The notes under the pieces are model-generated. The model was not told where the DNA came from. It saw only the letters and a list, made by a program, of their open reading frames with translations, and did not search any database. Position numbers and translations under genes: made by a program. This document shows positions 1 to 22,579 of a DNA stretch of 64,000 nt, piece by piece. How positions within the stretch are numbered: position 1 is the stretch's first letter; each line of letters opens with the position of its first letter. Source of the stretch: Eutreptiella sp. 'Long Island Sound 2002' (taxonomy: Eukaryota; Protista; Euglenida); assembly GCA_964036045.1 (NCBI GenBank), contig OZ038378.1, positions 20,460,001 to 20,524,000 of the forward strand, in the 5' to 3' direction.

Positions 1-148
1 TCAGCACCACCACAGCACTCCACCTCAGCACCACCACATGAATCAAACGCACGTAGGCTAGCACACACAGGACGGAATGAGACAATGGACAGAATCAGTG
101 GATCACATTCAAAACCAAAAGCCTCTACGCTCCGTGCCCTCGGCATAC

Positions 149-304: not shown

Positions 305-433
305 CTGATCAACAGACCATCAAAGCAACACTGTCCACCTGCTATTTGCATGCAACGACCACATTCAACGGTGTCCTACCCTTTTGACGAGGGCCCTATC
401 TTCCCTGCACTATTCCTTATCCGAAACTTAAAC

Positions 434-580
434 CTGCAAAGTGGACCCGGAAAAAAGGAGATGATTGCAAAAATGGATCCGCATCATATGAGACCTTTTT
501 TTTTTTTTGCAAAGTGGGCCCCGAGCATATGAAACTATTGCAAAGTAACCCGCATCATATGAGGTAATTGCAAAGTTGCA
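434..580. repeat. About five degenerate 30-40 bp tandem units (TTGCAAAGTnnnCCGCATCATATGA-like) in the transporter intron
   Basis: TGCAAA(G/A)T-containing units start at 434, 464, 507, 538 and 568. Three carry (G)CATCATATGA or GCATATGA. Confidence 0.6.
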
Positions 581-599
581 TAGGGGATGCTTTCACATG

Positions 600-1200: not shown

Positions 1201-1792
1201 TCAGATGGGGTTCCCCTTCATGTTGCTCGCTTCCCATCCACTTTTTGCTGCCTTTTTTTTCCAGCCGCCATTGTTGGCTGATGGGGGGTTCTGGTTGTGC
1301 TTTTGTCTGGTTTGCGGATGTCGCGCAACAGACATGCCCACCTCAGTAGCACACATGACAGTGACTCGGACATCAACACAGCACCAGCACCAGCACCAGC
1401 ATCTAGAATGCTTCAACCACCCTGGACAGGACCTGGACAGAGAACTTTCAGAGCAAGGGAGAGCGGGGGAAAGGTCTGAGACCCAGAGGTTTGTAGGCAA
1501 AAATAGCTGAAATTCCGTTTCTAGCACAAAACATGCTTTCCCCCCTGGCATTTTCAGTCGGACCGGCGGCAGCGGGGGCTCTTCCTTAAAAATAAACATA
1601 CATTCCAAAGCATCACTGACCCGAGGGAACGATACCTGGGGCTGCAATGTGGCATCGTCCCACAGCAAATTCACTCTTTCCTGCCTGTCTTACAATCCCT
1701 CAGGGTCGCTGTACTCCTTAAGGGAGGCTGATACACAAAGAGAACATACAGAAAGCGGGGGCTAAGGTGAAAGGTGTGGCGAGTTCACATAC

Positions 1793-2246
1793 CAAGCAAC
1801 AAAATGTAGAAGTGGCCAAAGTGCTTCAACACACAGGATCCAATATAGATTGCTGCATACATCAGACATGACCGCTTACGGCCATACTTGTCTGCAAACA
1901 TTCCACAGAAGGTGCCCAGCAGCATACTGCTAGCGTAGCCGCTCAAGAAGAGCATGCCACACTGCCGTCGAGAGAATCCATAATTGGAATACAGCGCATA
2001 CATCATGGGTCCTTGCAGCCAGTCCCCAGCAAACATAATGCAATACACCACCAGAAACATTCGTTGGAATTTGCGGAATGCAGGAGTGCCCACCGCCGAC
2101 TCATTGGGTCTGCAAAGCATCAGAACGCTGAACAATGAGGTCAGCAGCACAAAAACAACTGCATAAACATGGCTGCCCGCTGACAACTCACTTATAGCGA
2201 GGCTCATCGTGCCCAGCAGCTCCGCAAAGTCTGTGGTGTGATCCAT
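1793..2246 (-). CDS. MFSD5: MFS molybdate-anion transporter (MFSD5/MOT2 family), N-terminal exon
   Basis: FRKFQRMFLVVYCIMFAGDWLQGPMMYALYSNYG...FADKYGRKRSCLMYAAIYIGSCVLKHF contains the characteristic DWLQGP and DKxGRK motifs. GTATGT donor at 1792. A pyrimidine-rich AG acceptor at 2307-2306 lies upstream of the ATG at 2246. Confidence 0.88.
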
Positions 2247-2749
2247 ACCCTTCTTGAGCTCGGAGCAGTCCCTGGCTCCACCAGGACTGCACTCATGCGG
2301 GGGGCCTGCAACACGAGGACAGAGAACACCCACACACTAGAATTGCTCATGTTGTGAAGCGTCGGAGGGGGTGGGTGGGTTGAAAGTGGTACTACTTTGC
2401 CTGTCCTCTGTCCCCTGCCCTCACCCACCAAACTGACTCAGGATCAACTGACAGACAGGACCGGAAGGCCACAAGGCCGTAGTGTGCATTCACACGGTGA
2501 ATCAACATTATTCTTCGCCCATACATCACAAGAACCCCCCCCCCCCCCCTACTGGATGTTTGGGCCATGAACAATGCACTGAAACGCTCCAGTTCAACCC
2601 CCAGTGGATATGGAGGAGGAGGCAAAGCGGGGGATGCACCGCTCACTGAATCGCTCAAGGTGGGCAATGAATACTTCACCATGCACCGAGGTACCAGCGA
2701 CACCACTAGTAGTATTCCTGGCTGTGGTGAACAGGCCTGCTTACGGCAG

Positions 2750-5400: not shown

Positions 5401-6239
5401 TGCTCACAACGGCAACAATTGAGCAATGCCCACTGAAAGTTGGGCTCGCACTAGCAACAACAGAGAAAAACCTACCAAAAGCGAGGCTTGCACAATTATA
5501 TAGGCAACATTTGAGTGGTGTTCACCTTGAATTTTTTTTGTACATCCGCCAGTCTAATGTACGGCCCCGTCTGAGGAGCGGAATCATGGCTATGCCATGG
5601 TCCGTAATGATTAGACATGCCGGTCTGTCCGAGGCGTTAACAAACACTCCCTCAAATTTCCAGCATTGGTGCATTCGATCATCCGGGTATGCCAAATGGC
5701 CACGTGTCAGCTGGTGACACTGATCACCACAACTCCTCGTTATTGTTTCATGCTCTCTCTTCCTATTCTCTCACTCCTCGCGTGACCTACTTCTAAATGT
5801 ACCCTCAATCGCCGTCGCTTTCTTTCCCCTTGAGTGGTGTTCACCTTTACAAGGGGGGTGCTCGGCTCTTACTCGGGTCCCCCATTTGTACTTTTTGCGA
5901 ATAGCCCATAGTATTTCCTTTAAAGGAGGCTCATAACCCCCCCACCCCCCCTTGTGCAAGCCATGGAAAAGTCCCAAATTAATACAGTCCCTATGCCTAC
6001 TGTAGCTTAGACAAGGCTGGCAAACAGGACACGGAAATGGGAACTGTTGCGCTAGTGCAAGCAAAGGATCAGGATAATGCCCATGGCCCCTCAAATCAAC
6101 ATTTGTGGGCACCATTAGGCAAACAAGAACATCTGGAATGTCCCTCAGCCCAAAACCCTGACACTTTAACCCCAAAACCTTGTCTCATGTGGTTGCAGCA
6201 AAATTCGTACCAAATCAAATTAGATCCCAAATTAATAAG

Positions 6240-7085: not shown

Positions 7086-8519
7086 GGCGGCCCCACTACG
7101 GGAACCAATACACTATGCCACAATAAATGTACAGTAAATTCAAGATTAAGATAATTGACAATTCTTGGAAGGAGTGCCCCATTTTCGACTCTCAATGCCT
7201 GCGCCCTGAAAAGCGTGAATTGCATTCACACTATTTCAGGCATCTCATTTGAGTACACTTGCAAATGAGGTACTTTTTGCGAATGTCATGCAAAGTTCGC
7301 ACGAAATTCACACATGCAACTTTGACACAATTTAAATCCCAAGTTGTACACATCAATTACAATCACTCATGAGCGCATATCCAAGGTATCATTCCCACCT
7401 CTTTCGGAATTTGAATCGTTGTTGCAAGGTTGGAACATACTTGAGGTTCGTAAGTAACCTCATGCGGGCCTGAGTGGCTGAGTGGCATGTTGTTGTTTTC
7501 TCTTCAAGCTTTGTCCATGCATTGCCCTCTTGGTGGCATCCCAACCTTCTGCCATCAGAATTGGGATCGACTATATCTCGGAGCCCCAGCTTCTCCCGAG
7601 GGCTCAGGCCCCCTCGATTGTGCAAATTTGGGGGGGGGGGGGGCTAGCGCTATTTTTGTACGGAGCATCCTGGCCTTAGCCCCAGTTTTGCCCTCCTACT
7701 GTTCAAGGCTGGGGGGGGGGGGGGGGTAGGAATGCCTGTGCAGGGGGACCGCATGGGGTGGGATGGGTCGGGGGGGGGGGGTGCAACCCTGCCTAAGTAA
7801 ATGATGCAAGCAGTAGAACTTCAGCAGTGACAAATTGAACGAACGGTGTGAAACTTCTTGGGTCCGAGATGGAAGCCTCCCCATCCTCTGATGTAGCCAG
7901 CCCCTCCATCTCCTTCACCCAATACCATCCCAATATGGGGCAGAAGGGGCAGTACGTTGCTGTCCCATTAACAGTCTTTGCGCCAGTCACATTCCACACC
8001 CCGCACCTGCGGCTGAGCCCGTCAGGGATTCTACAATGGAGGGAACGGGGCTGCAGTGTCTACGTCCTACAGCCATCCAAGAGACGTTGGGCGCCAGAGC
8101 CTCAACCCACAGGCGTGCAAGGGCCGCATAGAGCACGATGCCGCACCACTTCAGGGTGATGAAGGTCAAAGCACCAGGCTGTAGCCGGCTTGATGGCAGA
8201 AAAACATCATGCTTCAGAATTCTGTGTGTTCCTGTAAGGGCTTGCCTTCATGGATACCACATTCATGAACACCTTTCATATTGTGCCTGGAAATAGGAAC
8301 TGCAGCAACATTGACAGATTTGAAATGAAAACAAAAAGGCTCTTGTGGAACCTTCAACGGGGACCCAAACACCCCCAAAATATTCCACCCCCAACGGGAA
8401 CTTCTGATGAATTTTCAAATTGTATGCACCTTGAGTTATGTGGCAAAAAGGGAAGCCTTTGGCAAAATACCCCAACTGGTACCTGTATACACCTTTGGTA
8501 CCCCCCCCCCCCCCGGGCT

Positions 8520-8870
8520 CGTCCCCTGGTGCAAGCTATGGTCGACAAGTTGGCAGAGAAGGAGGCCAAGTGGGGGTCGCATCTCCATGTGACAATGAAG
8601 ACCATGAAAGAGGTGACAGAGCTTGTTGCACAGGGGTGGGTGGAGGCATACAAGGACAGGTCAGCCAAACAGGTGCAGGAATGGATGCAAGCAGGGAATG
8701 GGATTTATTCTTTGGAACAATCGGTAAGGAATTTTTCGGCGCACGTGCCGGTCACAGAGCGCCAAAGTGTAAGTTGGGGAGAGTTTCGGGGCGTGTTGCA
8801 TGTGTCACTGCAGAGCAAACCAGGAGAGCGCCTAGTGTCTGTGTGGGGCGGGGGGGGGGGGTCCAACACC
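8520..8870 (+). mobile_element. Third fragment of the RNase H-bearing LINE family, opposite orientation
   Basis: WVEAYKDRSAKQVQEWMQAG...GEFRGVLHVSLQSKPGERLV parallels AYTDGSAKHVWGWMRAG...RRPGERLV at 3800-4330. Confidence 0.7.
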
Positions 8871-9160
8871 CACCACCCCAAACTACTTGAAATACACTTG
8901 AGACGCGCCCCACACACACTAGGAGGTGGTCGCTGGACAAGCCGGTCATTGCCCATTGCGCGTGCGGGGGACAGCCTAGCAGTATTTTGCTTGAAACGCA
9001 ACTTATCTTCTCAGTCAGATGTGTGAATGATCTGTGATGCTGTGCACATGGTGATGTCGTGAGTGTGTGCACCCATTTCCGATCCTCATTTACACACATT
9101 CAGAGTTGCTGGAACGTTCAGCCGGCTCTTCCCAAAAGCTTTTGGCATGCACAAGCGCGT

Positions 9161-9197
9161 ACACACACACACACACACGCACACACACACACACACA

Positions 9198-9270
<73 letters not shown>

Positions 9271-9271
9271 C

Positions 9272-9303
<32 letters not shown>
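9161..9303. repeat. Compound (CA)n/(CGCA)n microsatellite, left flank of the PLE array
   Basis: Read directly from the sequence. Confidence 0.98.
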
Positions 9304-9765
9304 GTGCAGCAATGTAAGCAAGAAAAAGCCGATTCTCAACAGAGCATGAATCTTTGACAGTAAGAGGAAAATGTTGCTCTCATGTATGTCCGGGAGATGA
9401 ATGACGTCACAAACCGTTCACAAGGTTAGACAGGTCACTGCAACGTTGACTAGCAATTAGCATTGTGACGTGCACATGAAACGCTTTGACGTGGCGACTT
9501 CACAATTCGTGAGGAACAAGATATGTAATCGCTCTGCACAATGGCGAAGAACAGTTTCATGTGGTCGGCGATACAAATCATAGTCAATCGTCTTACCTAC
9601 AGCAAAATCATTCTCGTGAACCACAGAACCAGACAAAGCAAGGGAGGAACCATTCCTATGACCGTCAAGCAGGATTTCTCGTAACCTTTTCATGAAGCGC
9701 TTACATCTAGAATTGCAGTCCGTACAACCGTTCAATCCAGGCATTGGAAGGTTCAGGATATATTC
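9301..9765. repeat. PLE pseudo-LTR copy 1 (465 bp), followed by (CA)10
   Basis: Matches 15844-16308 and 19902-20366. Confidence 0.95.
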
Positions 9766-9796
9766 ACACACACACACACACACAAAATCCCCTGCA

Positions 9797-12700
9797 TTAC
9801 CGCTGGCGACAACGTCGTTTGGGTAGGGGATGGTCTGCCATATACTCAAGCAACTGCAATCTGGAGTCTGGCATGGAGGTGTGTGCAAGTGAATCGGAAA
9901 CAGATGTAACATCCAGAAACCGGCAGCGCTTGGCTGCCCGTTGACGTCCTTTGCCTCCTATAGGTGGATTGGGGAGTTGTGGTACCTTGTGTTCAGTGAT
10001 GAGCGGGGAGATTGCATAATGGGCAACAAGTTTCATCAGGAATGTCAGTCCCTTACAAAGCTTTTTTGACCAAGTGCGCAGGAGAAACATATAGAATATT
10101 GCCAAATTTCTACTGGGTACTGCAAAGCATAGTTTGGTGGCAACACGACAGAGGGGAAGGAAGACTGGCCATCGCTGGGTGACAAGGGAAAGTGGCAGGT
10201 GAAACCAAAAATGGACGAAGATGTATTTTGCAGTAGTACAGAGTTGGTAGATGGTGGAGTATGGTATGTACGAGAAAATAGTAGAGTACCATAGTACACG
10301 GGGAAGGTATGTGACTGGTGCTGTTTTCTCAACAAGTAACTCCATGTGTTTCAGGGATAGCACCGGTGGTAGTATGCTGGTGGTCAGAGAAAAGGTGGGA
10401 ACGGACTTCAGAGAGGTGGTTGTCAACAAACTTGCAGATTGCAACAAACAGTATTTTGGAGGACAGGGCACAACCCAGGGCAATTCATCGAGAAATTGAT
10501 TCCATGTCAATGGCAAATCGGAATAAGAGGAATATGCTCGACGTACCACTGGCATCCACCAAGACAGTGGATATGTTTTTTGCAGGAATTCCCACACAAT
10601 ATGGGCACAATTGGAAATAAATAGCACAGGGTGGGTGTGTAGAATGGAAGCTAAGTTGACCAAATTCACTGCCATGCCATGTACAATACGTGCTGCATGT
10701 AGAGAATGCACATCAGGGTACCGAGACACTGGGATACGCGGGGTAAGGCAGGACAGGAGTACCTTGTTTTTCATACCCCAATGAATTTCAGGACCTACAC
10801 AGGAAATCTGGAGTTGCAATGTGTTGAAACTAGTGCCTAGTTGCTCAACAGTCAAGGGAACACGATAGATTTCCGTGAGAAGCCGTTTGACCCGCTGGAC
10901 TGTCGCCAGAAGGTTGTGTTTAGGGCAAAGTCCTACAACATTATCAACATAGCGACACAATTTTGTATGTTCAGGTAAACGGGCATCCCAATTGATGGTG
11001 CTTTCAGCATGCATGAGGATGACATTTGCATTCTGCGAGGCCATCTGAGCACCAATGGCCACTCCAGTGTATTGTTCAAATATGTCAGAACCAATTTGGA
11101 ATAAGTCATTCAAGTAGGCATCCAAGGTAATGCGATCAACCAATTCTCGACTGGAGAACACAGAATAATATTTGGGGGACTTTTTTCCAATGCAATCTAA
11201 CTGTGAATCGGAACCATGGGCCACAGAAATGTATATATCCTTTTCTGTACGGCGGTAACAATACATTTTGGTACAGCGGTCGAAAAGGTTAGTGTAAGCT
11301 GGCCTGAGCATGGACCTGTCCAAGCTGGGGAACATTCGTTTCAGGTCCAGCTCAAAACCGGCAACGTCGACATTCAATGCTGAAAAGTACTGTTGTGCCG
11401 GGCGCAGAAATTGGGTAACCAGCTGTTGCTGTGTAAGGATTTGTAAAGAAAAGAAAGAACTTTGAAAAAGACGGCATGCAACCGAAGCCGCACGACTAAC
11501 AATGCGGGAATGGCGTTTCCAGGGATGGGCACCATTACTAAAAATTTCCCTGGTGGCAACATCAGCAATGGGCTGGGTCGGTTGGTACGGAAGACTTTTG
11601 CCTTTTATTGAAAGAATGACAGAGGGGGGATACACCTGTTTCGTATGTCGATGCCCATATGGGTATATCGGTGGCGCATACAGTATGTTATCCGTAAGGT
11701 GCATCTGCTGTTGGGCATCGTGTAGTAGTATGTTTTTTACTGTACATAACGTTTGTGGTGTGATGGGATGAGATGGAACAGGCAACAGGGGTGTTTTGAT
11801 GGAAATACCTTTGAGTATGGGCACCTGAAGGGACAATGTGTTCCGCAGGCGGAGGGGAGACAAATGATTGAGAATCTCAGGATACACTCGGACACACAAG
11901 TTATAATACAAAAGCAGGACATTGCGTGCCCGGGTGGGAGAACGACAGGTAAATAAATGACGGTAATTGACTGCCTGTGTGAACACATATAAGATCAATC
12001 GGTAAAAGGTAACAATTGTGGCCACAGCATACAGTAAGGGGTATTTATCAACACGTACGGGCAGGAGTTCTGGGAATGTGTGTTGAAAAGACTTGAGTGT
12101 TGCTGTGCGAATACAAGACTGAGCGACTGAAGAGGATTGGAGAGTAGATGTCAGGAGTGTATGCACTTTAGCAGCAAACTGTGTAAAGGGAAAGGGGGCA
12201 GCCTTTGGTAATTGTGATTTCAGGGACTCCAGGTGCTCTGCAAGACGTCGATGAGCAGTCACAGACGCCGGAATAATTGTATGGTTGAGGGGTGCGTGCA
12301 ACAATTGGGTAAGGGGTGTGGGGTGTTGGGGCGTCACAATTTCCGGTCCTGTTGCAATGAAATTATCTTCGTGAGAATGAGCAGTCACATAATTCTGATA
12401 ATCAGCAATGGACAATTGCAAACGATCCTGGGTGAAGGTCTGTGACAATTTGTGTGGGTGGCAGAGGGGTACAATCAGGATTTTGTGGAGGTATTGTTTG
12501 AGAATTCGGGGCAAAGTAGTAGCATGAATGAAATCAGCAAACCACTTCTTGATGTGCACCACATCCAGGGCAGTAATGCAGGGGATACGTAAGAGCAGAA
12601 AATATGGCATGTCGATGTGGAAATGTCTATTGATCAATGGGAAGAACCGTGTTTGCATGACGTGGAATTTCCAAGCTGGGACCACACCTTTTGCTTGCAC

Positions 12701-14575
12701 CAAAATCTTTAGAGCATCTGCACCAGAGATAGTAAGACGTCGCAATGAGAGTTGATGGTCCCAGAATTGAACATTCATCAAAGCACATTGAGTGATGGTT
12801 TTGAGCATTTTGTGACGTACGAGCCATCGAATGAAACCCTTGGATCGTCGTTTTTGGGTGTTGAGTGTGGGTGGATTGTTGGCAATAGTTTGCTGTTCAA
12901 TACGATCAGCTCCTGAGTGTGACAGCATTTTGACAGGGATGGGTAGGAAATTAAAAAATCCTAGAGTGTGCAATGTACGAAAATAAAGCGGTCCTTTATA
13001 AGGGGAGGTATGTTGAAGTTTGGCCCATGCCATGGCCTGTTGCAATTCCTCTCGCCAACGAGCAAACACCGTACGGGGTCGAGAAATGACACCCGTTTGT
13101 CCATAATATATGGCAGTGAGGAGCGGGGAGAAGGATGCATATAACCATTGTCCGGGTTGTTCCATACCTTTGAGCGCAGCCCAATCAACGAGACACAGAA
13201 GCTTTCGAATATGAGCCATAGGCGCATAAGGCAGGATAGGGATACATCGAGTAACAGACCTCTGAATGGCAGTCCATGCATTGGGCCGATTAAGGTTTTC
13301 AAATGCATCTTGACGGATCAGTCGTTCAGTGTTCCATACATGCCAGAAAAACTGTTTGCCATCACATGGGGGGACATATGCTGGCACACCGGAAGTAACA
13401 TGGACATATGGTACAGGGGGATGGGCTGGCATATATGTAGCAGGCACTTTGGGCATACAAATATGGGTAGGCAAAGTAACAAATTTATGTCCAATGTGTT
13501 TAAGTGGTGAAGCTGTGATGGCTGTGAATGTAGAGGTGTTAATGGGCCACAAAATGGATGCCAACGGGTTTTGGAAAAGCCATAGGGCTTCAGATGTGGA
13601 CGTAGAATATGTGAGTTGGCTGGCATATCGTTCCAGACACCAGTTGGGAATATGTACACTGAGATCAGGTGTCAGCAAAAGAACAAACCGTGCAGGTGCT
13701 GATGGATACAGTAAACACTGCAACATTGCAGGGAAAATATTGTATGTGGTATTATGCAGGTATGGACGGTAGCATATACAGTTAACATATCGTTTGGCCT
13801 GGAGGAAGGACCATGGGGAAACGTACCAGTCCATGGTATCCGTATCAGCCGCAGGAATATGCATGTATGGCAAAACAGAATGATGGTTCAAGGGAGCATG
13901 CAGTTCCATATCCACTCCCAGCGCGATATGGAGACTTCGTGTGAGCATATGAAGGGTTGCCTTGTATTGTCGATGTGTATATGGTGCTGTAGGTTTTTGT
14001 ACATGTGGGATATAATACAGTAGATTCCAGAGGTAATTAGTAAGTTTCAAAAGCCATGGTAAAAAGCAACGAATAGTAGAAGGTAAAATATCAATCCAAC
14101 AGGCGAGTCCCCTACAACGACAGAATTGGAGCCACATGGTACGTAAGTAGGGGTAACGATATGTAGAATGAGCAAAAGCACGAACAAATTGGGATGGTGG
14201 ATAGGGAGAGTCCATACAAAAGGGGGCAATGACATCAGACGGATCACAGGAGGGGCGGGACAATTTTTGTGACTGCTTGACATCATTGAGCATGCTATGT
14301 AAACAGTCCTGCATTTTATTAAGTCCCAAAAATTCTTCAAGAACATCCAGATGACTGAGACCATGTCGTATGTCAGCAAGTTGATTCACTTGATTCGGTA
14401 GAGCATCAGAATCCATAAACCAGTACTGACATGTCCAGAAACAGGATGGTATCACCCACTGCTGGGAAAAGATGGAAAGGGATGGGAAACAAGGTGGTCG
14501 ACTTGAGAAGACCGGTCTCTGTGTTCGTGGGCATGAACAAGTCCAATACAGAAAATTGGAAGACCGGTCACACAA
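9797..14575 (-). CDS. PLE ORF2, 1592 aa uninterrupted: PCIF1-like methyltransferase fold, GIY-YIG endonuclease, reverse transcriptase
   Basis: GIY-YIG at about 12855-13150 (WLYA...IYYGQT...RWREE...RIEQQ...TLN). RT at about 10700-11900 (ELDLKRMFPSL, RYVDNVV, thumb SRYPDVHS). First ATG at 14416; the frame is open from 14641. Confidence 0.92.
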   Translation of the reverse strand: MCDRSSNFLYWTCSCPRTQRPVFSSRPPCFPSLSIFSQQWVIPSCFWTCQYWFMDSDALPNQVNQLADIRHGLSHLDVLEEFLGLNKMQDCLHSMLNDVKQSQKLSRPSCDPSDVIAPFCMDSPYPPSQFVRAFAHSTYRYPYLRTMWLQFCRCRGLACWIDILPSTIRCFLPWLLKLTNYLWNLLYYIPHVQKPTAPYTHRQYKATLHMLTRSLHIALGVDMELHAPLNHHSVLPYMHIPAADTDTMDWYVSPWSFLQAKRYVNCICYRPYLHNTTYNIFPAMLQCLLYPSAPARFVLLLTPDLSVHIPNWCLERYASQLTYSTSTSEALWLFQNPLASILWPINTSTFTAITASPLKHIGHKFVTLPTHICMPKVPATYMPAHPPVPYVHVTSGVPAYVPPCDGKQFFWHVWNTERLIRQDAFENLNRPNAWTAIQRSVTRCIPILPYAPMAHIRKLLCLVDWAALKGMEQPGQWLYASFSPLLTAIYYGQTGVISRPRTVFARWREELQQAMAWAKLQHTSPYKGPLYFRTLHTLGFFNFLPIPVKMLSHSGADRIEQQTIANNPPTLNTQKRRSKGFIRWLVRHKMLKTITQCALMNVQFWDHQLSLRRLTISGADALKILVQAKGVVPAWKFHVMQTRFFPLINRHFHIDMPYFLLLRIPCITALDVVHIKKWFADFIHATTLPRILKQYLHKILIVPLCHPHKLSQTFTQDRLQLSIADYQNYVTAHSHEDNFIATGPEIVTPQHPTPLTQLLHAPLNHTIIPASVTAHRRLAEHLESLKSQLPKAAPFPFTQFAAKVHTLLTSTLQSSSVAQSCIRTATLKSFQHTFPELLPVRVDKYPLLYAVATIVTFYRLILYVFTQAVNYRHLFTCRSPTRARNVLLLYYNLCVRVYPEILNHLSPLRLRNTLSLQVPILKGISIKTPLLPVPSHPITPQTLCTVKNILLHDAQQQMHLTDNILYAPPIYPYGHRHTKQVYPPSVILSIKGKSLPYQPTQPIADVATREIFSNGAHPWKRHSRIVSRAASVACRLFQSSFFSLQILTQQQLVTQFLRPAQQYFSALNVDVAGFELDLKRMFPSLDRSMLRPAYTNLFDRCTKMYCYRRTEKDIYISVAHGSDSQLDCIGKKSPKYYSVFSSRELVDRITLDAYLNDLFQIGSDIFEQYTGVAIGAQMASQNANVILMHAESTINWDARLPEHTKLCRYVDNVVGLCPKHNLLATVQRVKRLLTEIYRVPLTVEQLGTSFNTLQLQISCVGPEIHWGMKNKVLLSCLTPRIPVSRYPDVHSLHAARIVHGMAVNLVNLASILHTHPVLFISNCAHIVWEFLQKTYPLSWWMPVVRRAYSSYSDLPLTWNQFLDELPWVVPCPPKYCLLQSASLLTTTSLKSVPTFSLTTSILPPVLSLKHMELLVEKTAPVTYLPRVLWYSTIFSYIPYSTIYQLCTTAKYIFVHFWFHLPLSLVTQRWPVFLPLCRVATKLCFAVPSRNLAIFYMFLLRTWSKKLCKGLTFLMKLVAHYAISPLITEHKVPQLPNPPIGGKGRQRAAKRCRFLDVTSVSDSLAHTSMPDSRLQLLEYMADHPLPKRRCRQR

Positions 14576-14622
14576 GGGCGTAAGCGCCGGGGAAAGGGCA
14601 ATACGGGGTCGTAGGGGCTCAG

Positions 14623-15744
14623 CTACACATTTTTTGCGACATCAGCGGTAGCTGCAAGATTGTTGTGCACCCCTCGGACAGTAACATTGGGAACAGGAGT
14701 TCCATCATCGTCGACGGCAACTGCCTCAAATTTGTCGTTGTCAATGAGTTCAGTGATACGACCAGGACAAGCAACCCACGGTTCAACGTTAGAGCGACGG
14801 AAGGTGAACCAAACAGCTTGGCCTTTGACCGGCTGCTCCGGGGACCGGCAATCATCAGAAAAAACGTACAGCGTAAGGGATTTTCCAGCAAGCGCCGCAT
14901 CAATCTTGTTGCCAAGAGAATCAACTTTCCGATGAATTTCGTGTTTGAACTGGTTCATACCATCTTCCAAAGCATCCATGCGTCGATGAAGTGGGTCGGG
15001 GTCCGGTAAGTCCAGCGCCATAGACTGGGGTACATCGGCAGATTGAGATTGAGAAAACAAATCGGGTTGTGAATAGGGAAGAGAAGAGTTGGTACTTTGA
15101 GATTGAGAAAGAGGGGGCTGTCCACTTTGCAGCGATCGCGCCACCGCCAAATTCAGCGTGGGACGGCCCAGCACAATGGGAGTAAGGGACTGAGCAGGAG
15201 GAGTAGCGCTCTGGAAAAGTTCCATTTTCAAATCAATGTCGCCGTCTTTGCTGGACTTCAGGCGATTGATAGCATCATCTCGATGTTCATTGGTGGCAAA
15301 ACCAAGAAGAACGTTGGTATTTTTTGCATAGATGCATTCCAAATTGGAAATTGCCTTGGACAGAATTTCTTTGTCCATATCATCCGCCTGCCTGGTAAGA
15401 TGAATGACGATGCCCCATTTAATGTTTTTCTTAAGAAGAACATCAGCATGCTGCGGCAGGGCATCCGCCAAAATTTCACGCACCGTATTGGCCATAGCAT
15501 CCGGATCGGAAACGCGAGGCATAGTGCCGGTGGCAGAATCCAAAAGGCAATCGGACTGTTTATGCCCCACAAGCTTTTTGTGAAATTCACACCAATACTG
15601 TGGTTTGCCAGTACCAGGCCACGTACCAACAGCTTCGTCGCCATTTTTGTAATTGTCAGGGCGCTTTTGAAGTGCACTGTTTTCGGGACAATTTTTAGAG
15701 AAGTGACCCGTTTTGTGGCACTTGAAACATGTAAGGGTTGTCAT
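14623..15744 (-). CDS. PLE ORF1, 373 aa: CCHC zinc knuckle, second Cys/His finger, RRM-like segment, coiled coil, Tudor-like C-terminus
   Basis: CFKCHKTGHFSKNC (CX2CX4HX4C); WCEFHKKLVGHKQSDC; VLLGFATNEHRDDAINRL (RRM beta3-alpha2-like); heptads LHRRMDALEDGMNQFKHEIHRKVDSLGNKIDAAL. ATG at 15744. Confidence 0.85.
   Translation of the reverse strand: MTTLTCFKCHKTGHFSKNCPENSALQKRPDNYKNGDEAVGTWPGTGKPQYWCEFHKKLVGHKQSDCLLDSATGTMPRVSDPDAMANTVREILADALPQHADVLLKKNIKWGIVIHLTRQADDMDKEILSKAISNLECIYAKNTNVLLGFATNEHRDDAINRLKSSKDGDIDLKMELFQSATPPAQSLTPIVLGRPTLNLAVARSLQSGQPPLSQSQSTNSSLPYSQPDLFSQSQSADVPQSMALDLPDPDPLHRRMDALEDGMNQFKHEIHRKVDSLGNKIDAALAGKSLTLYVFSDDCRSPEQPVKGQAVWFTFRRSNVEPWVACPGRITELIDNDKFEAVAVDDDGTPVPNVTVRGVHNNLAATADVAKNV
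14629..14635 (-). promoter_or_regulatory. Candidate -1 ribosomal frameshift slippery heptamer A AAA AAU joining PLE ORF1 to ORF2 (second copy at 18687-18693)
   Basis: ORF1 reads GCA AAA AAT GTG TAG. The -1 frame is open from 14641 into ORF2 and is bounded upstream by a TGA at 14644-14642. Confidence 0.5.
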
Positions 15745-15843
15745 GATGACGTTGTCAAGGACCGGTTGTGATAGTACAAGCGGCAGCAAGAGATGAGCTG
15801 AGAGGTCGAACACCGCGCGTACAAGCAGCTATCCTCAGCGCAC

Positions 15844-16308
15844 ACAGTGCAGCAATGTAAGCAAGAAAAAGCCGATTCTCAACAGAGCATGAATCTTTGA
15901 CAGTAAGAGGAAAATGTTGCTCTCATGTATGTCCGGGAGATGAATGACGTCACAAACCGTTCACAAGGTTAGACAGGTCACTGCAACGTTGACTAGCAAT
16001 TAGCATTGTGACGTGCACATGAAACGCTTTGACGTGGCGACTTCACAATTCGTGAGGAACAAGATATGTAATCGCTCTGCACAATGGCGAAGAACAGTTT
16101 CATGTGGTCGGCGATACAAATCATAGTCAATCGTCTTACCTACAGCAAAATCATTCTCGTGAACCACAGAACCAGACAAAGCAAGGGAGGAACCATTCCT
16201 ATGACCGTCAAGCAGGATTTCTCGTAACCTTTTCATGAAGCGCTTACATCTAGAATTGCAGTCCGTACAACCGTTCAATCCAGGCATTGGAAGGTTCAGG
16301 ATATATTC
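15844..16308. repeat. PLE pseudo-LTR copy 2, followed by (CA)9
   Basis: Direct repeat of 9301-9765. Confidence 0.95.
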
Positions 16309-18633
16309 ACACACACACACACACACCGGAATAATTGTATGGTTGAGGGGTGCGTGCAACAATTGGGTAAGGGGTGTGGGGTGTTGGGGCGTCACAATTT
16401 CCGGTCCTGTTGCAATGAAATTATCTTCGTGAGAATGAGCAGTCACATAATTCTGATAATCAGCAATGGACAATTGCAAACGATCCTGGGTGAAGGTCTG
16501 TGACAATTTGTGTGGGTGGCAGAGGGGTACAATCAGGATTTTGTGGAGGTATTGTTTGAGAATTCGGGGCAAAGTAGTAGCATGAATGAAATCAGCAAAC
16601 CACTTCTTGATGTGCACCACATCCAGGGCAGTAATGCAGGGGATACGTAAGAGCAGAAAATATGGCATGTCGATGTGGAAATGTCTATTGATCAATGGGA
16701 AGAACCGTGTTTGCATGACGTGGAATTTCCAAGCTGGGACCACACCTTTTGCTTGCACCAAAATCTTTAGAGCATCTGCACCAGAGATAGTAAGACGTCG
16801 CAATGAGAGTTGATGGTCCCAGAATTGAACATTCATCAAAGCACATTGAGTGATGGTTTTGAGCATTTTGTGACGTACGAGCCATCGAATGAAACCCTTG
16901 GATCGTCGTTTTTGGGTGTTGAGTGTGGGTGGATTGTTGGCAATAGTTTGCTGTTCAATACGATCAGCTCCTGAGTGTGACAGCATTTTGACAGGGATGG
17001 GTAGGAAATTAAAAAATCCTAGAGTGTGCAATGTACGAAAATAAAGCGGTCCTTTATAAGGGGAGGTATGTTGAAGTTTGGCCCATGCCATGGCCTGTTG
17101 CAATTCCTCTCGCCAACGAGCAAACACCGTACGGGGTCGAGAAATGACACCCGTTTGTCCATAATATATGGCAGTGAGGAGCGGGGAGAAGGATGCATAT
17201 AACCATTGTCCGGGTTGTTCCATACCTTTGAGCGCAGCCCAATCAACGAGACACAGAAGCTTTCGAATATGAGCCATAGGCGCATAAGGCAGGATAGGGA
17301 TACATCGAGTAACAGACCTCTGAATGGCAGTCCATGCATTGGGCCGATTAAGGTTTTCAAATGCATCTTGACGGATCAGTCGTTCAGTGTTCCATACATG
17401 CCAGAAAAACTGTTTGCCATCACATGGGGGGACATATGCTGGCACACCGGAAGCAACATGGACATATGGTACAGGGGGATGGGCTGGCATATATGTAGCA
17501 GGCACTTTGGGCATACAAATATGGGTAGGCAAAGTAACAAATTTATGTCCAATGTGTTTAAGTGGTGAAGCTGTGATGGCTGTGAATGTAGAGGTGTTAA
17601 TGGGCCACAAAATGGATGCCAACGGGTTTTGGAAAAGCCATAGGGCTTCAGATGTGGACGTAGAATATGTGAGTTGGCTGGCATATCGTTCCAGACACCA
17701 GTTGGGAATATGTACACTGAGATCAGGTGTCAGCAAAAGAACAAACCGTGCAGGTGCTGATGGATACAGTAAACACTGCAACATTGCAGGGAAAATATTG
17801 TATGTGGTATTATGCAGGTATGGACGGTAGCATATACAGTTAACATATCGTTTGGCCTGGAGGAAGGACCATGGGGAAACGTACCAGTCCATGGTATCCG
17901 TATCAGCCGCAGGAATATGCATGTATGGCAAAACAGAATGATGGTTCAAGGGAGCATGCAGTTCCATATCCACTCCCAGCGCGATATGGAGACTTCGTGT
18001 GAGCATATGAAGGGTTGCCTTGTATTGTCGATGTGTATATGGTGCTGTAGGTTTTTGTACATGTGGGATATAATACAGTAGATTCCAGAGGTAATTAGTA
18101 AGTTTCAAAAGCCATGGTAAAAAGCAACGAATAGTAGAAGGTAAAATATCAATCCAACAGGCGAGTCCCCTACAACGACAGAATTGGAGCCACATGGTAC
18201 GTAAGTAGGGGTAACGATATGTAGAATGAGCAAAAGCACGAACAAATTGGGATGGTGGATAGGGAGAGTCCATACAAAAGGGGGCAATGACATCAGACGG
18301 ATCACAGGAGGGGCGGGACAATTTTTGTGACTGCTTGACATCATTGAGCATGCTATGTAAACAGTCCTGCATTTTATTAAGTCCCAAAAATTCTTCAAGA
18401 ACATCCAGATGACTGAGACCATGTCGTATGTCAGCAAGTTGATTCACTTGATTCGGTAGAGCATCAGAATCCATAAACCAGTACTGACATGTCCAGAAAC
18501 AGGATGGTATCACCCACTGCTGGGAAAAGATGGAAAGGGATGGGAAACAAGGCGGTCGACTTGAGAAGACCGGTCTCTGTGTTCGTGGGCATGAACAAGT
18601 CCAATACAGAAAATTGGAAGACCGGTCACACAA
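16000..18633 (-). CDS. 3'-truncated PLE ORF2 (877-aa open frame: PCIF1-like and GIY-YIG, no RT) fused in frame to a reading frame inside the pseudo-LTR
   Basis: Matches 12268-14575, then runs through (TG)n into the pLTR sequence (...TIIP-VCVCVCEYILNL...). Confidence 0.85.
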   Translation of the reverse strand: MCDRSSNFLYWTCSCPRTQRPVFSSRPPCFPSLSIFSQQWVIPSCFWTCQYWFMDSDALPNQVNQLADIRHGLSHLDVLEEFLGLNKMQDCLHSMLNDVKQSQKLSRPSCDPSDVIAPFCMDSPYPPSQFVRAFAHSTYRYPYLRTMWLQFCRCRGLACWIDILPSTIRCFLPWLLKLTNYLWNLLYYIPHVQKPTAPYTHRQYKATLHMLTRSLHIALGVDMELHAPLNHHSVLPYMHIPAADTDTMDWYVSPWSFLQAKRYVNCICYRPYLHNTTYNIFPAMLQCLLYPSAPARFVLLLTPDLSVHIPNWCLERYASQLTYSTSTSEALWLFQNPLASILWPINTSTFTAITASPLKHIGHKFVTLPTHICMPKVPATYMPAHPPVPYVHVASGVPAYVPPCDGKQFFWHVWNTERLIRQDAFENLNRPNAWTAIQRSVTRCIPILPYAPMAHIRKLLCLVDWAALKGMEQPGQWLYASFSPLLTAIYYGQTGVISRPRTVFARWREELQQAMAWAKLQHTSPYKGPLYFRTLHTLGFFNFLPIPVKMLSHSGADRIEQQTIANNPPTLNTQKRRSKGFIRWLVRHKMLKTITQCALMNVQFWDHQLSLRRLTISGADALKILVQAKGVVPAWKFHVMQTRFFPLINRHFHIDMPYFLLLRIPCITALDVVHIKKWFADFIHATTLPRILKQYLHKILIVPLCHPHKLSQTFTQDRLQLSIADYQNYVTAHSHEDNFIATGPEIVTPQHPTPLTQLLHAPLNHTIIPVCVCVCEYILNLPMPGLNGCTDCNSRCKRFMKRLREILLDGHRNGSSLALSGSVVHENDFAVGKTIDYDLYRRPHETVLRHCAERLHILFLTNCEVATSKRFMCTSQC

Positions 18634-18680
18634 GGGCGTAAGCGCCGGGGAAAGGGCAATACGGGGTCGTAGGGGCTCAG

Positions 18681-19802
18681 CTACACATTTTTTGCGACAT
18701 CAGCGGTAGCTGCAAGATTGTTGTGCACCCCTCGGACAGTAACATTGGGAACAGGAGTTCCATCATCGTCGACGGCAACTGCCTCAAATTTGTCGTTGTC
18801 AATGAGTTCAGTGATACGACCAGGACAAGCAACCCACGGTTCAACGTTAGAGCGACGGAAGGTGAACCAAACAGCTTGGCCTTTGACCGGCTGCTCCGGG
18901 GACCGGCAATCATCAGAAAAAACGTACAGCGTAAGGGATTTTCCAGCAAGCGCCGCATCAATCTTGTTGCCAAGAGAATCAACTTTCCGATGAATTTCGT
19001 GTTTGAACTGGTTCATACCATCTTCCAAAGCATCCATGCGTCGATGAAGTGGGTCGGGGTCCGGTAAGTCCAGCGCCATAGACTGGGGTACATCGGCAGA
19101 TTGAGATTGAGAAAACAAATCGGGTTGTGAATAGGGAAGAGAAGAGTTGGTACTTTGAGATTGAGAAAGAGGGGGCTGTCCACTTTGCAGCGATCGCGCC
19201 ACCGCCAAATTCAGCGTGGGACGGCCCAGCACAATGGGAGTAAGGGACTGAGCAGGAGGAGTAGCGCTCTGGAAAAGTTCCATTTTCAAATCAATGTCGC
19301 CGTCTTTGCTGGACTTCAGGCGATTGATAGCATCATCTCGATGTTCATTGGTGGCAAAACCAAGAAGAACGTTGGTATTTTTTGCATAGATGCATTCCAA
19401 ATTGGAAATTGCCTTGGACAGAATTTCTTTGTCCATATCATCCGCCTGCCTGGTAAGATGAATGACGATGCCCCATTTAATGTTTTTCTTAAGAAGAACA
19501 TCAGCATGCTGCGGCAGGGCATCCGCCAAAATTTCACGCACCGTATTGGCCATAGCATCCGGATCGGAAACGCGAGGCATAGTGCCGGTGGCAGAATCCA
19601 AAAGGCAATCGGACTGTTTATGCCCCACAAGCTTTTTGTGAAATTCACACCAATACTGTGGTTTGCCAGTACCAGGCCACGTACCAACAGCTTCGTCGCC
19701 ATTTTTGTAATTGTCAGGGCGCTTTTGAAGTGCACTGTTTTCGGGACAATTTTTAGAGAAGTGACCCGTTTTGTGGCACTTGAAACACGTAAGGGTTGTC
19801 AT
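18681..19802 (-). CDS. PLE ORF1, second copy (373 aa)
   Basis: Same protein as 14623-15744, with one synonymous change at 19788. Confidence 0.85.
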   Translation of the reverse strand: MTTLTCFKCHKTGHFSKNCPENSALQKRPDNYKNGDEAVGTWPGTGKPQYWCEFHKKLVGHKQSDCLLDSATGTMPRVSDPDAMANTVREILADALPQHADVLLKKNIKWGIVIHLTRQADDMDKEILSKAISNLECIYAKNTNVLLGFATNEHRDDAINRLKSSKDGDIDLKMELFQSATPPAQSLTPIVLGRPTLNLAVARSLQSGQPPLSQSQSTNSSLPYSQPDLFSQSQSADVPQSMALDLPDPDPLHRRMDALEDGMNQFKHEIHRKVDSLGNKIDAALAGKSLTLYVFSDDCRSPEQPVKGQAVWFTFRRSNVEPWVACPGRITELIDNDKFEAVAVDDDGTPVPNVTVRGVHNNLAATADVAKNV

Positions 19803-19901
19803 GATGACGTTGTCAAGGACCGGTTGTGATAGTACAAGCGGCAGCAAGAGATGAGCTGAGAGGTCGAACACCGCGCGTACAAGCAGCTATCCTCAGCGCA
19901 C

Positions 19902-20365
19902 ACAGTGCAGCAATGTAAGCAAGAAAAAGCCGATTCTCAACAGAGCATGAATCTTTGACAGTAAGAGGAAAATGTTGCTCTCATGTATGTCCGGGAGATG
20001 AATGACGTCACAAACCGTTCACAAGGTTAGACAGGTCACTGCAACGTTGACTAGCAATTAGCATTGTGACGTGCACATGAAACGCTTTGACGTGGCGACT
20101 TCACAATTCGTGAGGAACAAGATATGTAATCGCTCTGCACAATGGCGAAGAACAGTTTCATGTGGTCGGCGATACAAATCATAGTCAATCGTCTTACCTA
20201 CAGCAAAATCATTCTCGTGAACCACAGAACCAGACAAAGCAAGGGAGGAACCATTCCTATGACCGTCAAGCAGGATTTCTCGTAACCTTTTCATGAAGCG
20301 CTTACATCTAGAATTGCAGTCCGTACAACCGTTCAATCCAGGCATTGGAAGGTTCAGGATATATT

Positions 20366-20366
<1 letters not shown>
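19902..20366. repeat. PLE pseudo-LTR copy 3
   Basis: Direct repeat of 9301-9765. Confidence 0.95.
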
Positions 20367-20593
<227 letters not shown>

Positions 20594-22579
20594 GATGGAT
20601 GCAGAGCGACAAGAACGGAAGGGGGACTAAGAACACTGACAACCCTGAAAGCAGTGAGGGGGGCAACTCTTCTTGTCAGGCCACAAAAATAGTACAATGA
20701 ATTGGTTATGAGGAATGCTTGCCGCCTTTTGAAAGAAACGGATGCCGAGAGAACGCTCACCCGCCACTCACTCCCTCACCCACTCACTCACTCACTTGCC
20801 TTTGGCAGACGCTAAAACGTTCCCCTGATTGTACTGCTCAGACTTCCACTCCAGCCTAAGCGCCGAAAACCTCATGGTTGTCGGATTGCTGGGAATTGGC
20901 CCACGAGATTGGTTCCCACCTAAGGAGGGCTCCAGTCTATGGAATGGTCCACTGCCACAGTGCTTACCAAATTGATTCCCACCGTTTCACAGCGTGCTCA
21001 GAGTGGGCATCGTGACCCACAACACCGGAGCCCCATACCACGGCAGTGCGCCCTGCCTCCATACCATCACCGAAATGGGTTCTGTTACAAACAAAATTTC
21101 CTGGCGAAGTGTCGCGCGCAGGTTGTTGGATAAAAGGGCCGACAAAGGGTTGGGGAACCATGAAGGCAGAAGAATCTTCAGGTATGTACAGCCGAGAACA
21201 TAATCTGTCTGAGGATGGGAAAGATCCCTGCACAAGCACGACGGCAGAGAAGGTGGGCTCGTGGTCAACACCAACACGGCACAACCTGAGCTGTGGGTTT
21301 CGTGGCCAGAATGGTTGGAAAGCAGCAGACTATGGAAGTGGTCATTGTGTACCACTGCAGATCTCTTCAGCCTTCCTGAACCAGCCCAGGGGTGTCACAA
21401 CATCACAGACTCCTAGGGCACGTGAACCCTAGGGGTCCACACCTTTTGGGGGGGCAAAAAAATTAAAGTGCGGGGCAATGGGGGTGGCCCTAGAAAACCC
21501 CAACCCCCCTTTGGGACCTGTGCAAGCGGCTTTCACATGACATGTATGAGCCCCGGAGAGGGAATGGAAAGGAATTTGATGGTGTGCTGCACCCAGCGAC
21601 TAGGCACCAAGAACTAGGTGCCATGGCTGTTGTGGCACGACCCGATGGGCGGGGTGGGCAGCACCAAGCATACTAAACACCTAAGGAGCGCTCAAAATGG
21701 GCGCACGATGCAGCACGTCCCCGGGGTCAACCATCAAGGCAAGATTGGTGAAAAATTGCAAAGGCGCCCGGAGAGAAAGGGGCGGGGGGGCTTGGACCCC
21801 GGAAAATGAGCGGGGGGGGGGGGTTCGAAAAAGGATATCTCAGACATTCGTGTCGGAGAGCCAAGGGTGCGACACAGGTATCGCGACCAGGTTTGCCATG
21901 GCTCACCCTGGCAAGAGAACCTTAGACCCCACAAATTGCGGCATGTCGCAAACTCACCGTGCTCAGCCCGACAAATAAGGGCGCTTGACCAGCCCCACCA
22001 AAACGTCCTCGACAACGTGTGTTAGCGAGCCAATCGTGTTCTCCAAAGGAAAAAAACGTCTGTGCACCGACATATTGACAACCATTTGCATGTATGGTAT
22101 TGCAAATCCACTTGTAGGACGTTGTGAGATCAACACAGGAATTGCTTTTACTCCTCGCCTTAACTAAATATTGGAAGACCGAAAGGGGTTTGGATGGGGT
22201 TTCATGGGAGGTGGGCGACTTCCTTCGCACCCGGAGATGCCCAATAACGACCATACGTTCCTTTCGCCGCCATGATTGTGGGGCTTCCAAAATTAGAGCT
22301 ATTGACCAAGCGAGTAGCAAGTGTGTGTGGGCCAAGGTATCTTGATGGATGAAGCTAGGGTTATTTTCAGCGGTGATCCATATCTAGTGGTTGGTTGTAC
22401 ATTGCGTTGTGATTTGCACTCATAGACGCGAGATTGTTCCTCAACCTCACCGACCGGCAGTTAACTAATTGCATAGATCCTAGACAATGAAAATAAAGAG
22501 GCGACAAAGAATCAAAGCGCCTTTGTGAAGCGTAATTCAATCTTCGCGCATGTGCATGGTGAACGTGCAAAGCATGTCT

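What the first reader, a model, noticed from the sequence alone, without database searches (positions are those of the whole stretch)
13535..13955. PCIF1/CAPAM-like adenine N6-methyltransferase fold inside the PLE polyprotein
ORF2 residues LHIALGVDMELHAPLN...AADTD...CICYRPY...LQCLLYPSAPARFVLLLTP...LWLFQNPLASILWP align co-linearly with the PCIF1 cap methyltransferase core as I recall it (LHRLFGVSFECFASPLN...FPDTD...FEANPPF...FERLLESSPEPLSFIVFIP...VLFLQNDPGFAKWAP). The NPPF catalytic motif is replaced by YRPY, so the domain may be a catalytically altered SAM-, cap- or RNA-binding module. I know of no PLE reported with this domain. Euglenozoan mRNA caps are heavily methylated, so a cap-related role is plausible.
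Basis: partly seen in the sequence, partly recalled or inferred. Interest (0 to 1): 0.85.

Follow-up and report, generated by a model that had tools for sequence, protein, structure and literature searches.

The report
Dead PCIF1-like methyltransferase fold in retrotransposon
A jumping gene (a Penelope-like retrotransposon) in a euglenid genome carries, just ahead of its DNA-cutting domain, a protein module predicted to fold like the enzyme that methylates the first adenosine of capped mRNAs, but it has lost the catalytic residues, so it is probably a borrowed scaffold for binding nucleic acid, not a working enzyme.

Summary
The PCIF1 strings it recalled are correct for human PCIF1 (FPDTD).

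Sequence similarity alone does not exceed chance. Pfam, HMMER against PDB, a profile search of 1.84 billion proteins and hhalign against PCIF1 fragments all give nothing significant.

Two AlphaFold2 models (window copy; a 23%-identical relative) give a class I Rossmann methyltransferase fold. PCIF1/CAPAM is Foldseek rank 1 for both.
- Second model: PCIF1 ties with RlmJ and METTL16, all N6-adenine RNA methyltransferases.

No family member keeps the catalytic (D/N)PP(F/Y/W) motif (YRPY, LQPY, NFRD instead). The PCIF1 cap-contact residues E558 and W588 are not kept either.

Best reading: an inactive PCIF1-like pseudo-methyltransferase serving as a non-catalytic binding or scaffold module beside the N-terminal GIY-YIG nuclease. 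I found no methyltransferase-like domain reported in any PLE.

The scan noted the same idea on another copy in this genome (s1-216623).

The parts
13484..13990 (-). PCIF1-like Rossmann (class I methyltransferase-like) domain, ORF2 residues 196-364
13886..13933 (-). Strand 1 plus motif I-like loop, LHIALGVDMELHAPLN (residues 215-230), in register with PCIF1 LHRLFGVSFECFASPLN
   Evidence: Local alignment to natural PCIF1 fragment P0030 recovers this register. Model strand at model residues 124-126.
13838..13852 (-). AADTD (residues 242-246), in register with PCIF1 FPDTD; an acidic residue is kept here in most family members
   Evidence: FPDTD seen in P0030 and P0031.
13760..13771 (-). YRPY (residues 269-272) at the motif IV position directly after the strand NCICY; replaces the catalytic NPPF
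   Evidence: Model strand 165-170 followed by a loop. Relatives have LQPY (P0002), YRPY (P0005, P0006), NFRD (P0011) and no D/N-P-P in P0015.
13544..13585 (-). LWLFQNPLASILWP (residues 331-344), the best-conserved motif of the domain (hydrophobic-Q-N-x6-W-P), matching PCIF1 VLFLQNDPGFAKWAP
   Evidence: Conserved in window, P0002, P0007, P0009, P0011 and P0015. PCIF1 human and zebrafish strings.
14009..14206 (-). Conserved helical region N-terminal to the Rossmann domain (residues 124-189; SPYPPS..VRA..H..YR...LR..W)
   Evidence: Helices at model residues 30-89 with pLDDT 75-87. Conserved in P0002, P0010, P0011, P0012, P0014 and P0015. No clear structural match.
12860..13153 (-). GIY-YIG nuclease core (residues 475-572): WLY..., IYYGQTG, then conserved R, H, E, N
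   Evidence: Invariant columns. Motif position. No Pfam hit, so this rests on motifs.
10676..11362 (-). Reverse-transcriptase core (motif A AGFELDL, motif B TGVAIG..ASQNAN, motif C RYVDN)
   Evidence: No Pfam or PDB sequence hit, so this rests on motifs.
9797..14575 (-). ORF2, 1592 codons (first ATG at 14416)
   Evidence: 43-61% identical relatives P0002, P0003 and P0032.
14623..15813 (-). ORF1, 396 aa, CCHC zinc knuckle
   Evidence: PF00098, E 1.3e-4. The same layout is seen in L001 and L003.
17542..18048 (-). Second, identical copy of the domain in the upstream partial tandem copy (ORF 16000-18633)
   Evidence: 0 differences in 507 nt. Tandem offset 4058.
9298..9597 (-). 300-nt terminal repeat (pseudo-LTR), also at 15841-16140 and 19899-20198
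   Evidence: Three copies at 100% identity.

Best explanation
ORF2 residues about 196-364 form a real, conserved domain with the class I (Rossmann) SAM-methyltransferase fold. Its closest solved relative is the methyltransferase domain of the cap-specific adenosine N6-methyltransferase PCIF1/CAPAM. The domain has lost the (D/N)PP(F/Y/W) catalytic loop in every family member, and it does not keep the PCIF1 residues that touch the m7G cap. It is therefore most likely a pseudo-enzyme. It sits between a conserved helical region and the N-terminal GIY-YIG nuclease of a Chlamys/Naiad-type Penelope-like element whose nuclease region has no cysteines, so no CCHH-type zinc finger. In that position it probably acts as a non-catalytic nucleic-acid-binding or scaffolding module of the retrotransposition complex, holding the element's RNA or the (CA)n target DNA next to the nuclease, much as inactive METTL14 serves METTL3. 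Shown here: the domain exists, is conserved, has the predicted fold with PCIF1 as nearest neighbour, and lacks motif IV. Inferred: common descent from PCIF1 specifically, loss of activity, and the binding role.

For: Fold, second model. This is P0011, 23% identical to the window domain (pLDDT 67.5). Foldseek ranks 1-2 are PCIF1. VIA gives PCIF1 7.5-8.7, RlmJ 8.0-8.5 and METTL16 7.1-7.7, above all other methyltransferases at 6.9 or less.

No templates were used. The PCIF1 entries were released in December 2018, which to my knowledge is after the AF2 training cut-off, so memorisation is unlikely.

Register. It places YRPY directly after the strand that corresponds to strand 4, within 1-2 residues of N553-F556 when the offset from the VIA ranges is applied.

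Shared spacing and motif. Motif I to motif IV spacing is 48 residues in PCIF1 and 51 here. The C-terminal Q-N-x6-W motif is shared.

Conservation. The domain is present in diverged lineages of the family: P0002 at 39% identity in the domain, P0011 and P0015 at about 18-23%. P0015 comes from a different data set.

Catalysis. Motif IV reads YRPY, LQPY, NFRD or none. [quoted passage not shown]

Host source. A PCIF1 orthologue has been identified in Trypanosoma cruzi (PMC11417388), so a PCIF1 gene occurs within Euglenozoa.
Against: No sequence method reaches significance. There is no PF12237 hit and no PCIF1 hit by phmmer or hmmsearch against PDB at E up to 10. A family profile against 1.84 billion proteins found 12 hits, none of PCIF1 length; those inspected are relatives or fragments of this element family. 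hhalign against an alignment of PCIF1 fragments gives probability under 1%. Shuffle tests are mostly null.

I had no residue-level structural alignment, so the mapping of cap-contact and SAM-contact residues rests on the sequence register. The binding or scaffold role is pure inference.
Confidence: 0.6

Rival explanations
1. It is a degenerate N6-adenine methyltransferase-type Rossmann domain, but not specifically PCIF1-derived. It could descend from an RlmJ-, METTL16- or other amino-methyltransferase-like ancestor, and the motif resemblance to PCIF1 is coincidence.
Against: For the window model PCIF1 stands about 3 Z units above RlmJ and METTL16. Foldseek ranks PCIF1 first for both models. 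The compact motif I to motif IV spacing and the Q-N-x6-W motif are shared with PCIF1.
Confidence: 0.2
2. It is still an active or cofactor-binding module: a SAM-dependent methyltransferase with a non-canonical active site, or a SAM- or cap-adenosine-binding reader that recognises the hypermethylated cap-adjacent adenosine of spliced-leader-capped RNA.
For: The E..(A/S)PLN loop after strand 1 and the acidic residue of A-A-D-T-D are kept in the window lineage. An acidic residue at that position is kept in most members.
Against: No member keeps D/N-P-P at motif IV, and the residues there differ between lineages (YRPY, LQPY, NFRD), which is not what a conserved active site looks like. The motif I-like loop is not conserved in P0005, P0011 or P0015. 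The positions of the PCIF1 cap contacts E558 and W588 are His and a non-aromatic residue in the register used. The large PCIF1 helical domain that forms half of the cap pocket has no detected counterpart.
Confidence: 0.1
3. There is no methyltransferase fold at all. The AlphaFold models are unreliable guesses from a shallow alignment of an oddly composed protein, and the PCIF1 ranking is chance.
Confidence: 0.1

Closest known systems
PCIF1/CAPAM methyltransferase domain (Pfam PF12237; PDB 6IRV-6IS0)
   Same: Predicted Rossmann methyltransferase fold, best or tied-best structural match, covering the whole PCIF1 methyltransferase domain (human 491-668). The motifs are co-linear with near-equal spacing: E-x-x-(A/S)-P-L-N loop, D-T-D, x-x-P-(Y/F) after strand 4, P-x-x-F-hydrophobic strand 5, Q-N-x6-W near the C-terminus.
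   Different: No significant sequence or profile match. The catalytic N-P-P-F is replaced. The cap contacts E558 and W588 are not kept. There is no WW domain and no detected equivalent of the large helical domain. The strand 5 to strand 6 segment (substrate-binding loop region) is shorter, 46 residues against 73. The domain is embedded in a retrotransposon polyprotein.
Inactive methyltransferase-fold partners such as METTL14 (and the catalytically dead Drosophila Pcif1; both from my own knowledge of the literature)
   Same: The N6-adenine methyltransferase fold is retained after loss of the catalytic motif and used for RNA binding or scaffolding rather than catalysis. This is the working model proposed here.
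   Different: Those are host proteins working with an active partner or with RNA polymerase II. Here the fold is fused to a GIY-YIG nuclease and a reverse transcriptase, and no active partner is known.
N-terminal-endonuclease Penelope-like elements (Naiad/Chlamys clade; Craig et al. 2021, PMC8557442)
   Same: GIY-YIG upstream of the RT, pseudo-LTR and partial tandem structure, insertion in a microsatellite, no canonical hammerhead ribozyme, no CCHH finger in the nuclease (as in Chlamys). Some Chlamys have a separate upstream CCHC ORF and accessory domains (PHD, SAP, Josephin-like).
   Different: About 420 residues lie N-terminal to the nuclease and contain the methyltransferase-like domain; that paper's main text never mentions a methyltransferase (0 occurrences). 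No CxC motif was seen. RT motif C reads YVDN. The RT is too divergent for Pfam or PDB sequence hits, and the host is a euglenid.
RlmJ (23S rRNA m6A2030 methyltransferase) and METTL16
   Different: They score only about 5 for the window model. They carry canonical DPPY or NPPF motifs. No motif-level co-linearity was examined or claimed.

Membership tests
PCIF1/CAPAM family (PF12237) | Significant sequence or profile match to PF12237 or to PCIF1 proteins | tested here: not met
   hmmscan of ORF2, the domain, P0002, P0011 and P0015 gives no PF12237 hit at E up to 1-10. PDB phmmer and hmmsearch give no PCIF1 hit. The profile search of 1.84 billion proteins returned only 12 hits, none of PCIF1 length. 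hhalign against PCIF1 fragments gives probability under 1%.
PCIF1/CAPAM family (PF12237) | Methyltransferase-domain fold closest to PCIF1 structures | tested here: met
PCIF1/CAPAM family (PF12237) | Catalytic NPPF loop (N553-F556 in human) | tested here: not met
   YRPY in the window copy; LQPY, YRPY and NFRD in relatives.
PCIF1/CAPAM family (PF12237) | Cap pocket: helical domain plus m7G contacts (E558, W588, P591/P592) | tested here: inconclusive
   In the sequence register E558 falls on His274 and W588 on a non-aromatic residue. No match to the PCIF1 helical domain beyond one helix. No residue-level structural alignment was available.
Class I SAM-dependent methyltransferase fold | Seven-stranded Rossmann-like alpha/beta topology matching solved methyltransferases | tested here: met
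   Nearly all leading matches for both models are SAM-methyltransferase folds.
Class I SAM-dependent methyltransferase fold | SAM binding | not testable with these tools
   The motif I-like loop and the acidic residue are partly kept in the window lineage but variable across the family. This needs a binding assay.
N-terminal EN+ Penelope-like elements (Naiad/Chlamys) | GIY-YIG nuclease with conserved R, H, E, N upstream of the RT | tested here: met
   WLY-x10-YxGQTG, then invariant R448/R453, H483, E507 and N519 (numbering from M54). This rests on motifs; there is no Pfam hit.
N-terminal EN+ Penelope-like elements (Naiad/Chlamys) | Pseudo-LTRs from partial tandem insertion, and a microsatellite target | tested here: met
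   300-nt repeat three times, with a 4358-nt partial copy upstream of a 6843-nt full copy (repeats included; start-to-start spacings 4058 and 6543 nt) at 99.9% identity. (CA)n/(CACG)n on both flanks.
N-terminal EN+ Penelope-like elements (Naiad/Chlamys) | PLE/TERT-type RT with IFD, DKG/DKA and CxC motifs | tested here: inconclusive
   RT motifs A-C are visible and VDKYP is present. No CxC was seen. There is no Pfam or PDB sequence hit, and the RT-region search found only the same family. No phylogeny was done.
N-terminal EN+ Penelope-like elements (Naiad/Chlamys) | Lack of a canonical hammerhead ribozyme | tested here: met
   No hammerhead match in 8500-21000 at E up to 1.

The most novel reading that the evidence does not exclude
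The domain is a captured euglenozoan PCIF1 that has become a reader rather than a writer. It would bind the N6-methylated, 2'-O-methylated cap-adjacent adenosine of spliced-leader-capped RNA (or SAM), giving the element a way to recognise, protect or recruit capped template RNA. With the AlkB-type dioxygenase noted in a LINE of the same window, this would mean euglenid retrotransposons have repeatedly taken up parts of the adenine-N6-methylation machinery.
Probability: 0.12. Interest if true: 0.85.

Novelty: new variant of a known kind. Interest (0 to 1): 0.55.

Why it matters
Accessory domains of retrotransposons show which host pathways they exploit. I found no methyltransferase-fold domain, and in particular no PCIF1-like one, reported in any Penelope-like element. 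The main survey of N-terminal-nuclease PLEs never mentions one, and none of the 15 top-ranked papers in a PCIF1/Penelope/retrotransposon search contains the term PCIF1.

If the PCIF1 relationship holds, three things follow.
- It would be a case of a retroelement taking over a fold from mRNA-cap modification and keeping it as a pseudo-enzyme.
- It would extend known PLE architecture to Euglenozoa.
- It gives a defined, testable module (about 170-300 residues) for asking how GIY-YIG/RT elements bind their RNA or their microsatellite targets.

The claim rests on predicted structures. Sequence statistics do not support it on their own, so for now it is a good lead and not an established fact.

Tried and rejected
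1. Pfam on ORF2, the domain and relatives gave nothing, not even RVT or GIY-YIG.
2. phmmer and hmmsearch against PDB with the window domain, the family profile A3, the whole-ORF profile A1 and the P0015 domain gave no PCIF1, no TERT and only chance hits.
3. A profile search of 1.84 billion representatives with the domain alignment was meant to pull in PCIF1 if it is related. It returned 12 hits, none of PCIF1 length; those I inspected are relatives or fragments of this element family.
4. I collected natural PCIF1 fragments by searching with the PCIF1 blocks printed (16 fragments, all PF12237) and ran hhalign against A3 and A4. This was not significant. For A4 the top alignment was in the expected register, P of RPY on PPF. 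The PCIF1 alignment is made of short fragments with low diversity, so this is a weak test.
5. Block, HMM and Smith-Waterman shuffle tests were null for the window copy. P0015 scored z 5.5 in the ungapped block test and up to z 3.2 in the local alignments.
6. Rfam found no hammerhead ribozyme.
7. A word-based search with the RT region to tie the RT to named PLEs found only the same family.
8. dN/dS between the window copy and P0002 was considered and dropped. At about 40% amino-acid identity synonymous sites are saturated, and the closer copies (P0006, P0008) are decayed fragments.
Both were rerun.
Full report
**What is in the sequence**

The finding lies on the minus strand, in a 1592-codon ORF (9797-14575; first ATG at 14416).
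- LHIALGVD at residue 215
- AADTD at 242
- CICYRPY at 266
- LQCLLYPS at 285
- LWLFQNP...ILWP at 331-344, which is window 13933 down to 13544

**The element**

The ORF is ORF2 of a retroelement. Three perfect 300-nt repeats lie at 9298-9597, 15841-16140 and 19899-20198. They bound a full unit and an upstream partial unit that lacks 2485 nt, and the two units are 99.87% identical.

A 396-aa ORF1 with a CCHC knuckle precedes ORF2 (PF00098). The composite is flanked on both sides by (CA)n/(CACG)n. Rfam finds no hammerhead ribozyme.

ORF2 has a GIY-YIG-type motif set at residues 475-572: WLY, then YxGQTG, then invariant R, H, E and N. RT motifs lie near 1072-1211. These are conserved in relatives, but Pfam recognises nothing in ORF2.

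These features fit the N-terminal-endonuclease PLEs described by Craig et al. 2021: pseudo-LTRs, microsatellite bias, no canonical hammerhead, and Chlamys lacking the CCHH finger (PMC8557442). I could not confirm the RT's clade. A search with the RT region found only this same family.

**Check of the recalled PCIF1 strings**

Human PCIF1 (6irv_A) contains the following:
- LHRLFGVSFECFASPLNC
- GSFEANPPFCEELMDA
- VSHFERLLESSPEPLSFIVFIPE
- AVLFLQNDPGFAKWAP

Natural PCIF1 fragments show ...CSAFPDTDGYFGS... between the first two blocks. The recollection was accurate. Block spacing is 48/19/73 residues in PCIF1 and 51/19/46 in ORF2.

**Is the sequence similarity more than chance? No**

- Pfam PF12237 does not hit the domain or its relatives.
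- phmmer and hmmsearch against PDB find no PCIF1 at E up to 10, whether with the window domain, a 13-sequence family profile or the P0015 domain.
- A family profile run against 1.84 billion representative proteins found only 12 proteins, none of PCIF1 length. Those I inspected are fragments or relatives of this element.
- I gathered 16 natural PCIF1 fragments (all PF12237). hhalign of the family alignments against them gives probability under 1%. The top A4 alignment does fall in the expected register.
- Shuffle tests are null for the window copy: block score 36 against 41 +/- 7; local alignment z from -1 to 2.2. Only the compositionally ordinary relative P0015 gives some signal: z 5.5 in the ungapped block test and up to 3.2 in the local alignments.
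- An HMM of the family against the PCIF1 blocks gives E about 0.2 for one comparison.

**Fold evidence**

*Window model.* The AF2 model covers ORF2 residues 100-400 and used a 13-sequence alignment. Mean pLDDT is 64.5, with blocks mostly 70-90 between model residues 150 and 260. It is an alpha/beta domain preceded by helices.
- Foldseek against 350,542 PDB chains puts PCIF1/CAPAM entries at ranks 1-5 and 8 (E 5e-3 to 4e-2, probability 0.77-0.99). They are followed by DNMT3L, spermidine synthase, KsgA, Dam and flavivirus methyltransferases.

*Second model.* This is the relative P0011, 23% identical (pLDDT 67.5).
- Foldseek again ranks PCIF1 first and second.
- By VIA, PCIF1 (7.5-8.7) ties with RlmJ (8.0-8.5) and METTL16 (7.1-7.7). 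All three are N6-adenine RNA methyltransferases, and all stand above other methyltransferases at 6.9 or less.

*In favour.* The target family was named from sequence before any fold search. No templates were used. The PCIF1 structures date from December 2018, which to my knowledge is after AlphaFold2's training cut-off.

**Active site**

In the model, NCICY forms the strand at the strand-4 position and YRPY follows it, where amino-methyltransferases carry (D/N)PP(F/Y/W). With the VIA offset, model 106 pairs with human 491, which puts YRPY within 1-2 residues of N553-F556.

Across the family this site reads YRPY (window, P0005, P0006), LQPY (P0002) and NFRD (P0011), with nothing similar in P0015. 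No member has D/N-P-P, and the site is not conserved. Mutation of the Asn of the same NPPF motif inactivates METTL16, and alanine mutation of its first and last residues abolishes METTL5 activity (PMC8287941). N6-methyl transfer here is therefore unlikely.

The m7G contacts reported for PCIF1 are E558 and W588, with P591/P592 (PMC13290413). In this register they fall on His274 and on non-aromatic residues.

What is conserved:
- the helical region SPYP..VRA..H..YR
- an acidic residue at the D-T-D position, in most members
- the C-terminal hydrophobic-Q-N-x6-W-P motif, above all. It matches PCIF1 FLQN-x6-W-x-P and is the strongest shared sequence feature.

**Distribution**

P0002, P0005 and P0011 are encoded in one ENA assembly (ERZ25074135) as diverged lineages. 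P0015 comes from a separate read set (SRR14560441), on a 6.1-kb contig with the same CCHC-ORF1 plus ORF2 layout.

The domain has therefore been kept through deep divergence of the family (18-39% identity). That argues for a function.

**Interpretation**

The most likely reading (about 0.6) is a PCIF1-like pseudo-methyltransferase. It would serve as a non-catalytic binding or scaffold module next to the GIY-YIG nuclease, in an element whose nuclease region has no cysteines and so no CCHH-type finger.

The rivals:
- a generic N6-methyltransferase-type fold not specifically from PCIF1 (0.2)
- a still active or ligand- or cap-binding module (0.1)
- a modelling artefact (0.1)

A PCIF1 orthologue has been identified in Trypanosoma cruzi (PMC11417388), so capture from a euglenozoan host gene is plausible. 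I did not test this.

**Novelty**

Craig et al. list PHD, SAP, Josephin-like and CCHC accessory parts in Chlamys elements but no methyltransferase. None of the 15 top-ranked papers in a PCIF1/Penelope/retrotransposon search contains the term PCIF1.

Another first-stage note (s1-216623) made the same suggestion for another copy in this genome. I did not examine that copy.

Noticed in passing
window 10940-10951 (-), ORF2 residues 1209-1212: RT motif C reads RYVDN rather than Y-x-D-D. The second catalytic Asp is Asn, and this is invariant in three lineages 45-57% identical to each other (P0001, P0002, P0003), although the family looks young and multi-copy.
   Followed up: partly
window 9800-14416 (-): The ORF2 coding strand is G-poor (17.8% G; 13.8% at codon position 2). 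This gives a protein rich in L/P/S/T and poor in G/E/D. ORF1 of the same element and the distant relatives P0011 and P0015 have ordinary composition. This bias may be why Pfam and HMMER see nothing in ORF2.
   Followed up: partly
window 9200-9300 and 20366-20400: The composite element is flanked on both sides by (CA)n/(CACG)n microsatellite, consistent with microsatellite-targeted insertion.
   Followed up: partly
window 12264-12267 versus 16322-16325: The 2485-nt deletion that distinguishes the upstream partial copy starts just after two of the five mismatches between the tandem copies. The junction shares about 9 nt between the two blast segments (b 3873-3881).
   Followed up: no
L002 355-1803 and L004 1-1229: In the same assembly, other copies of this PLE family lie next to genes with a PiggyBac-type transposase domain (PF13843, DDE_Tnp_1_7). 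This may indicate transposon-rich regions.
   Followed up: no
L003 (Logan SRR14560441), 98-6103: A GC-rich, glycine-rich-insert-bearing relative from a different data set. It has a CCHC ORF1, the N-terminal helical and methyltransferase-like domains and GIY-YIG. ORF2 is broken near 4585, before the RT.
   Followed up: partly
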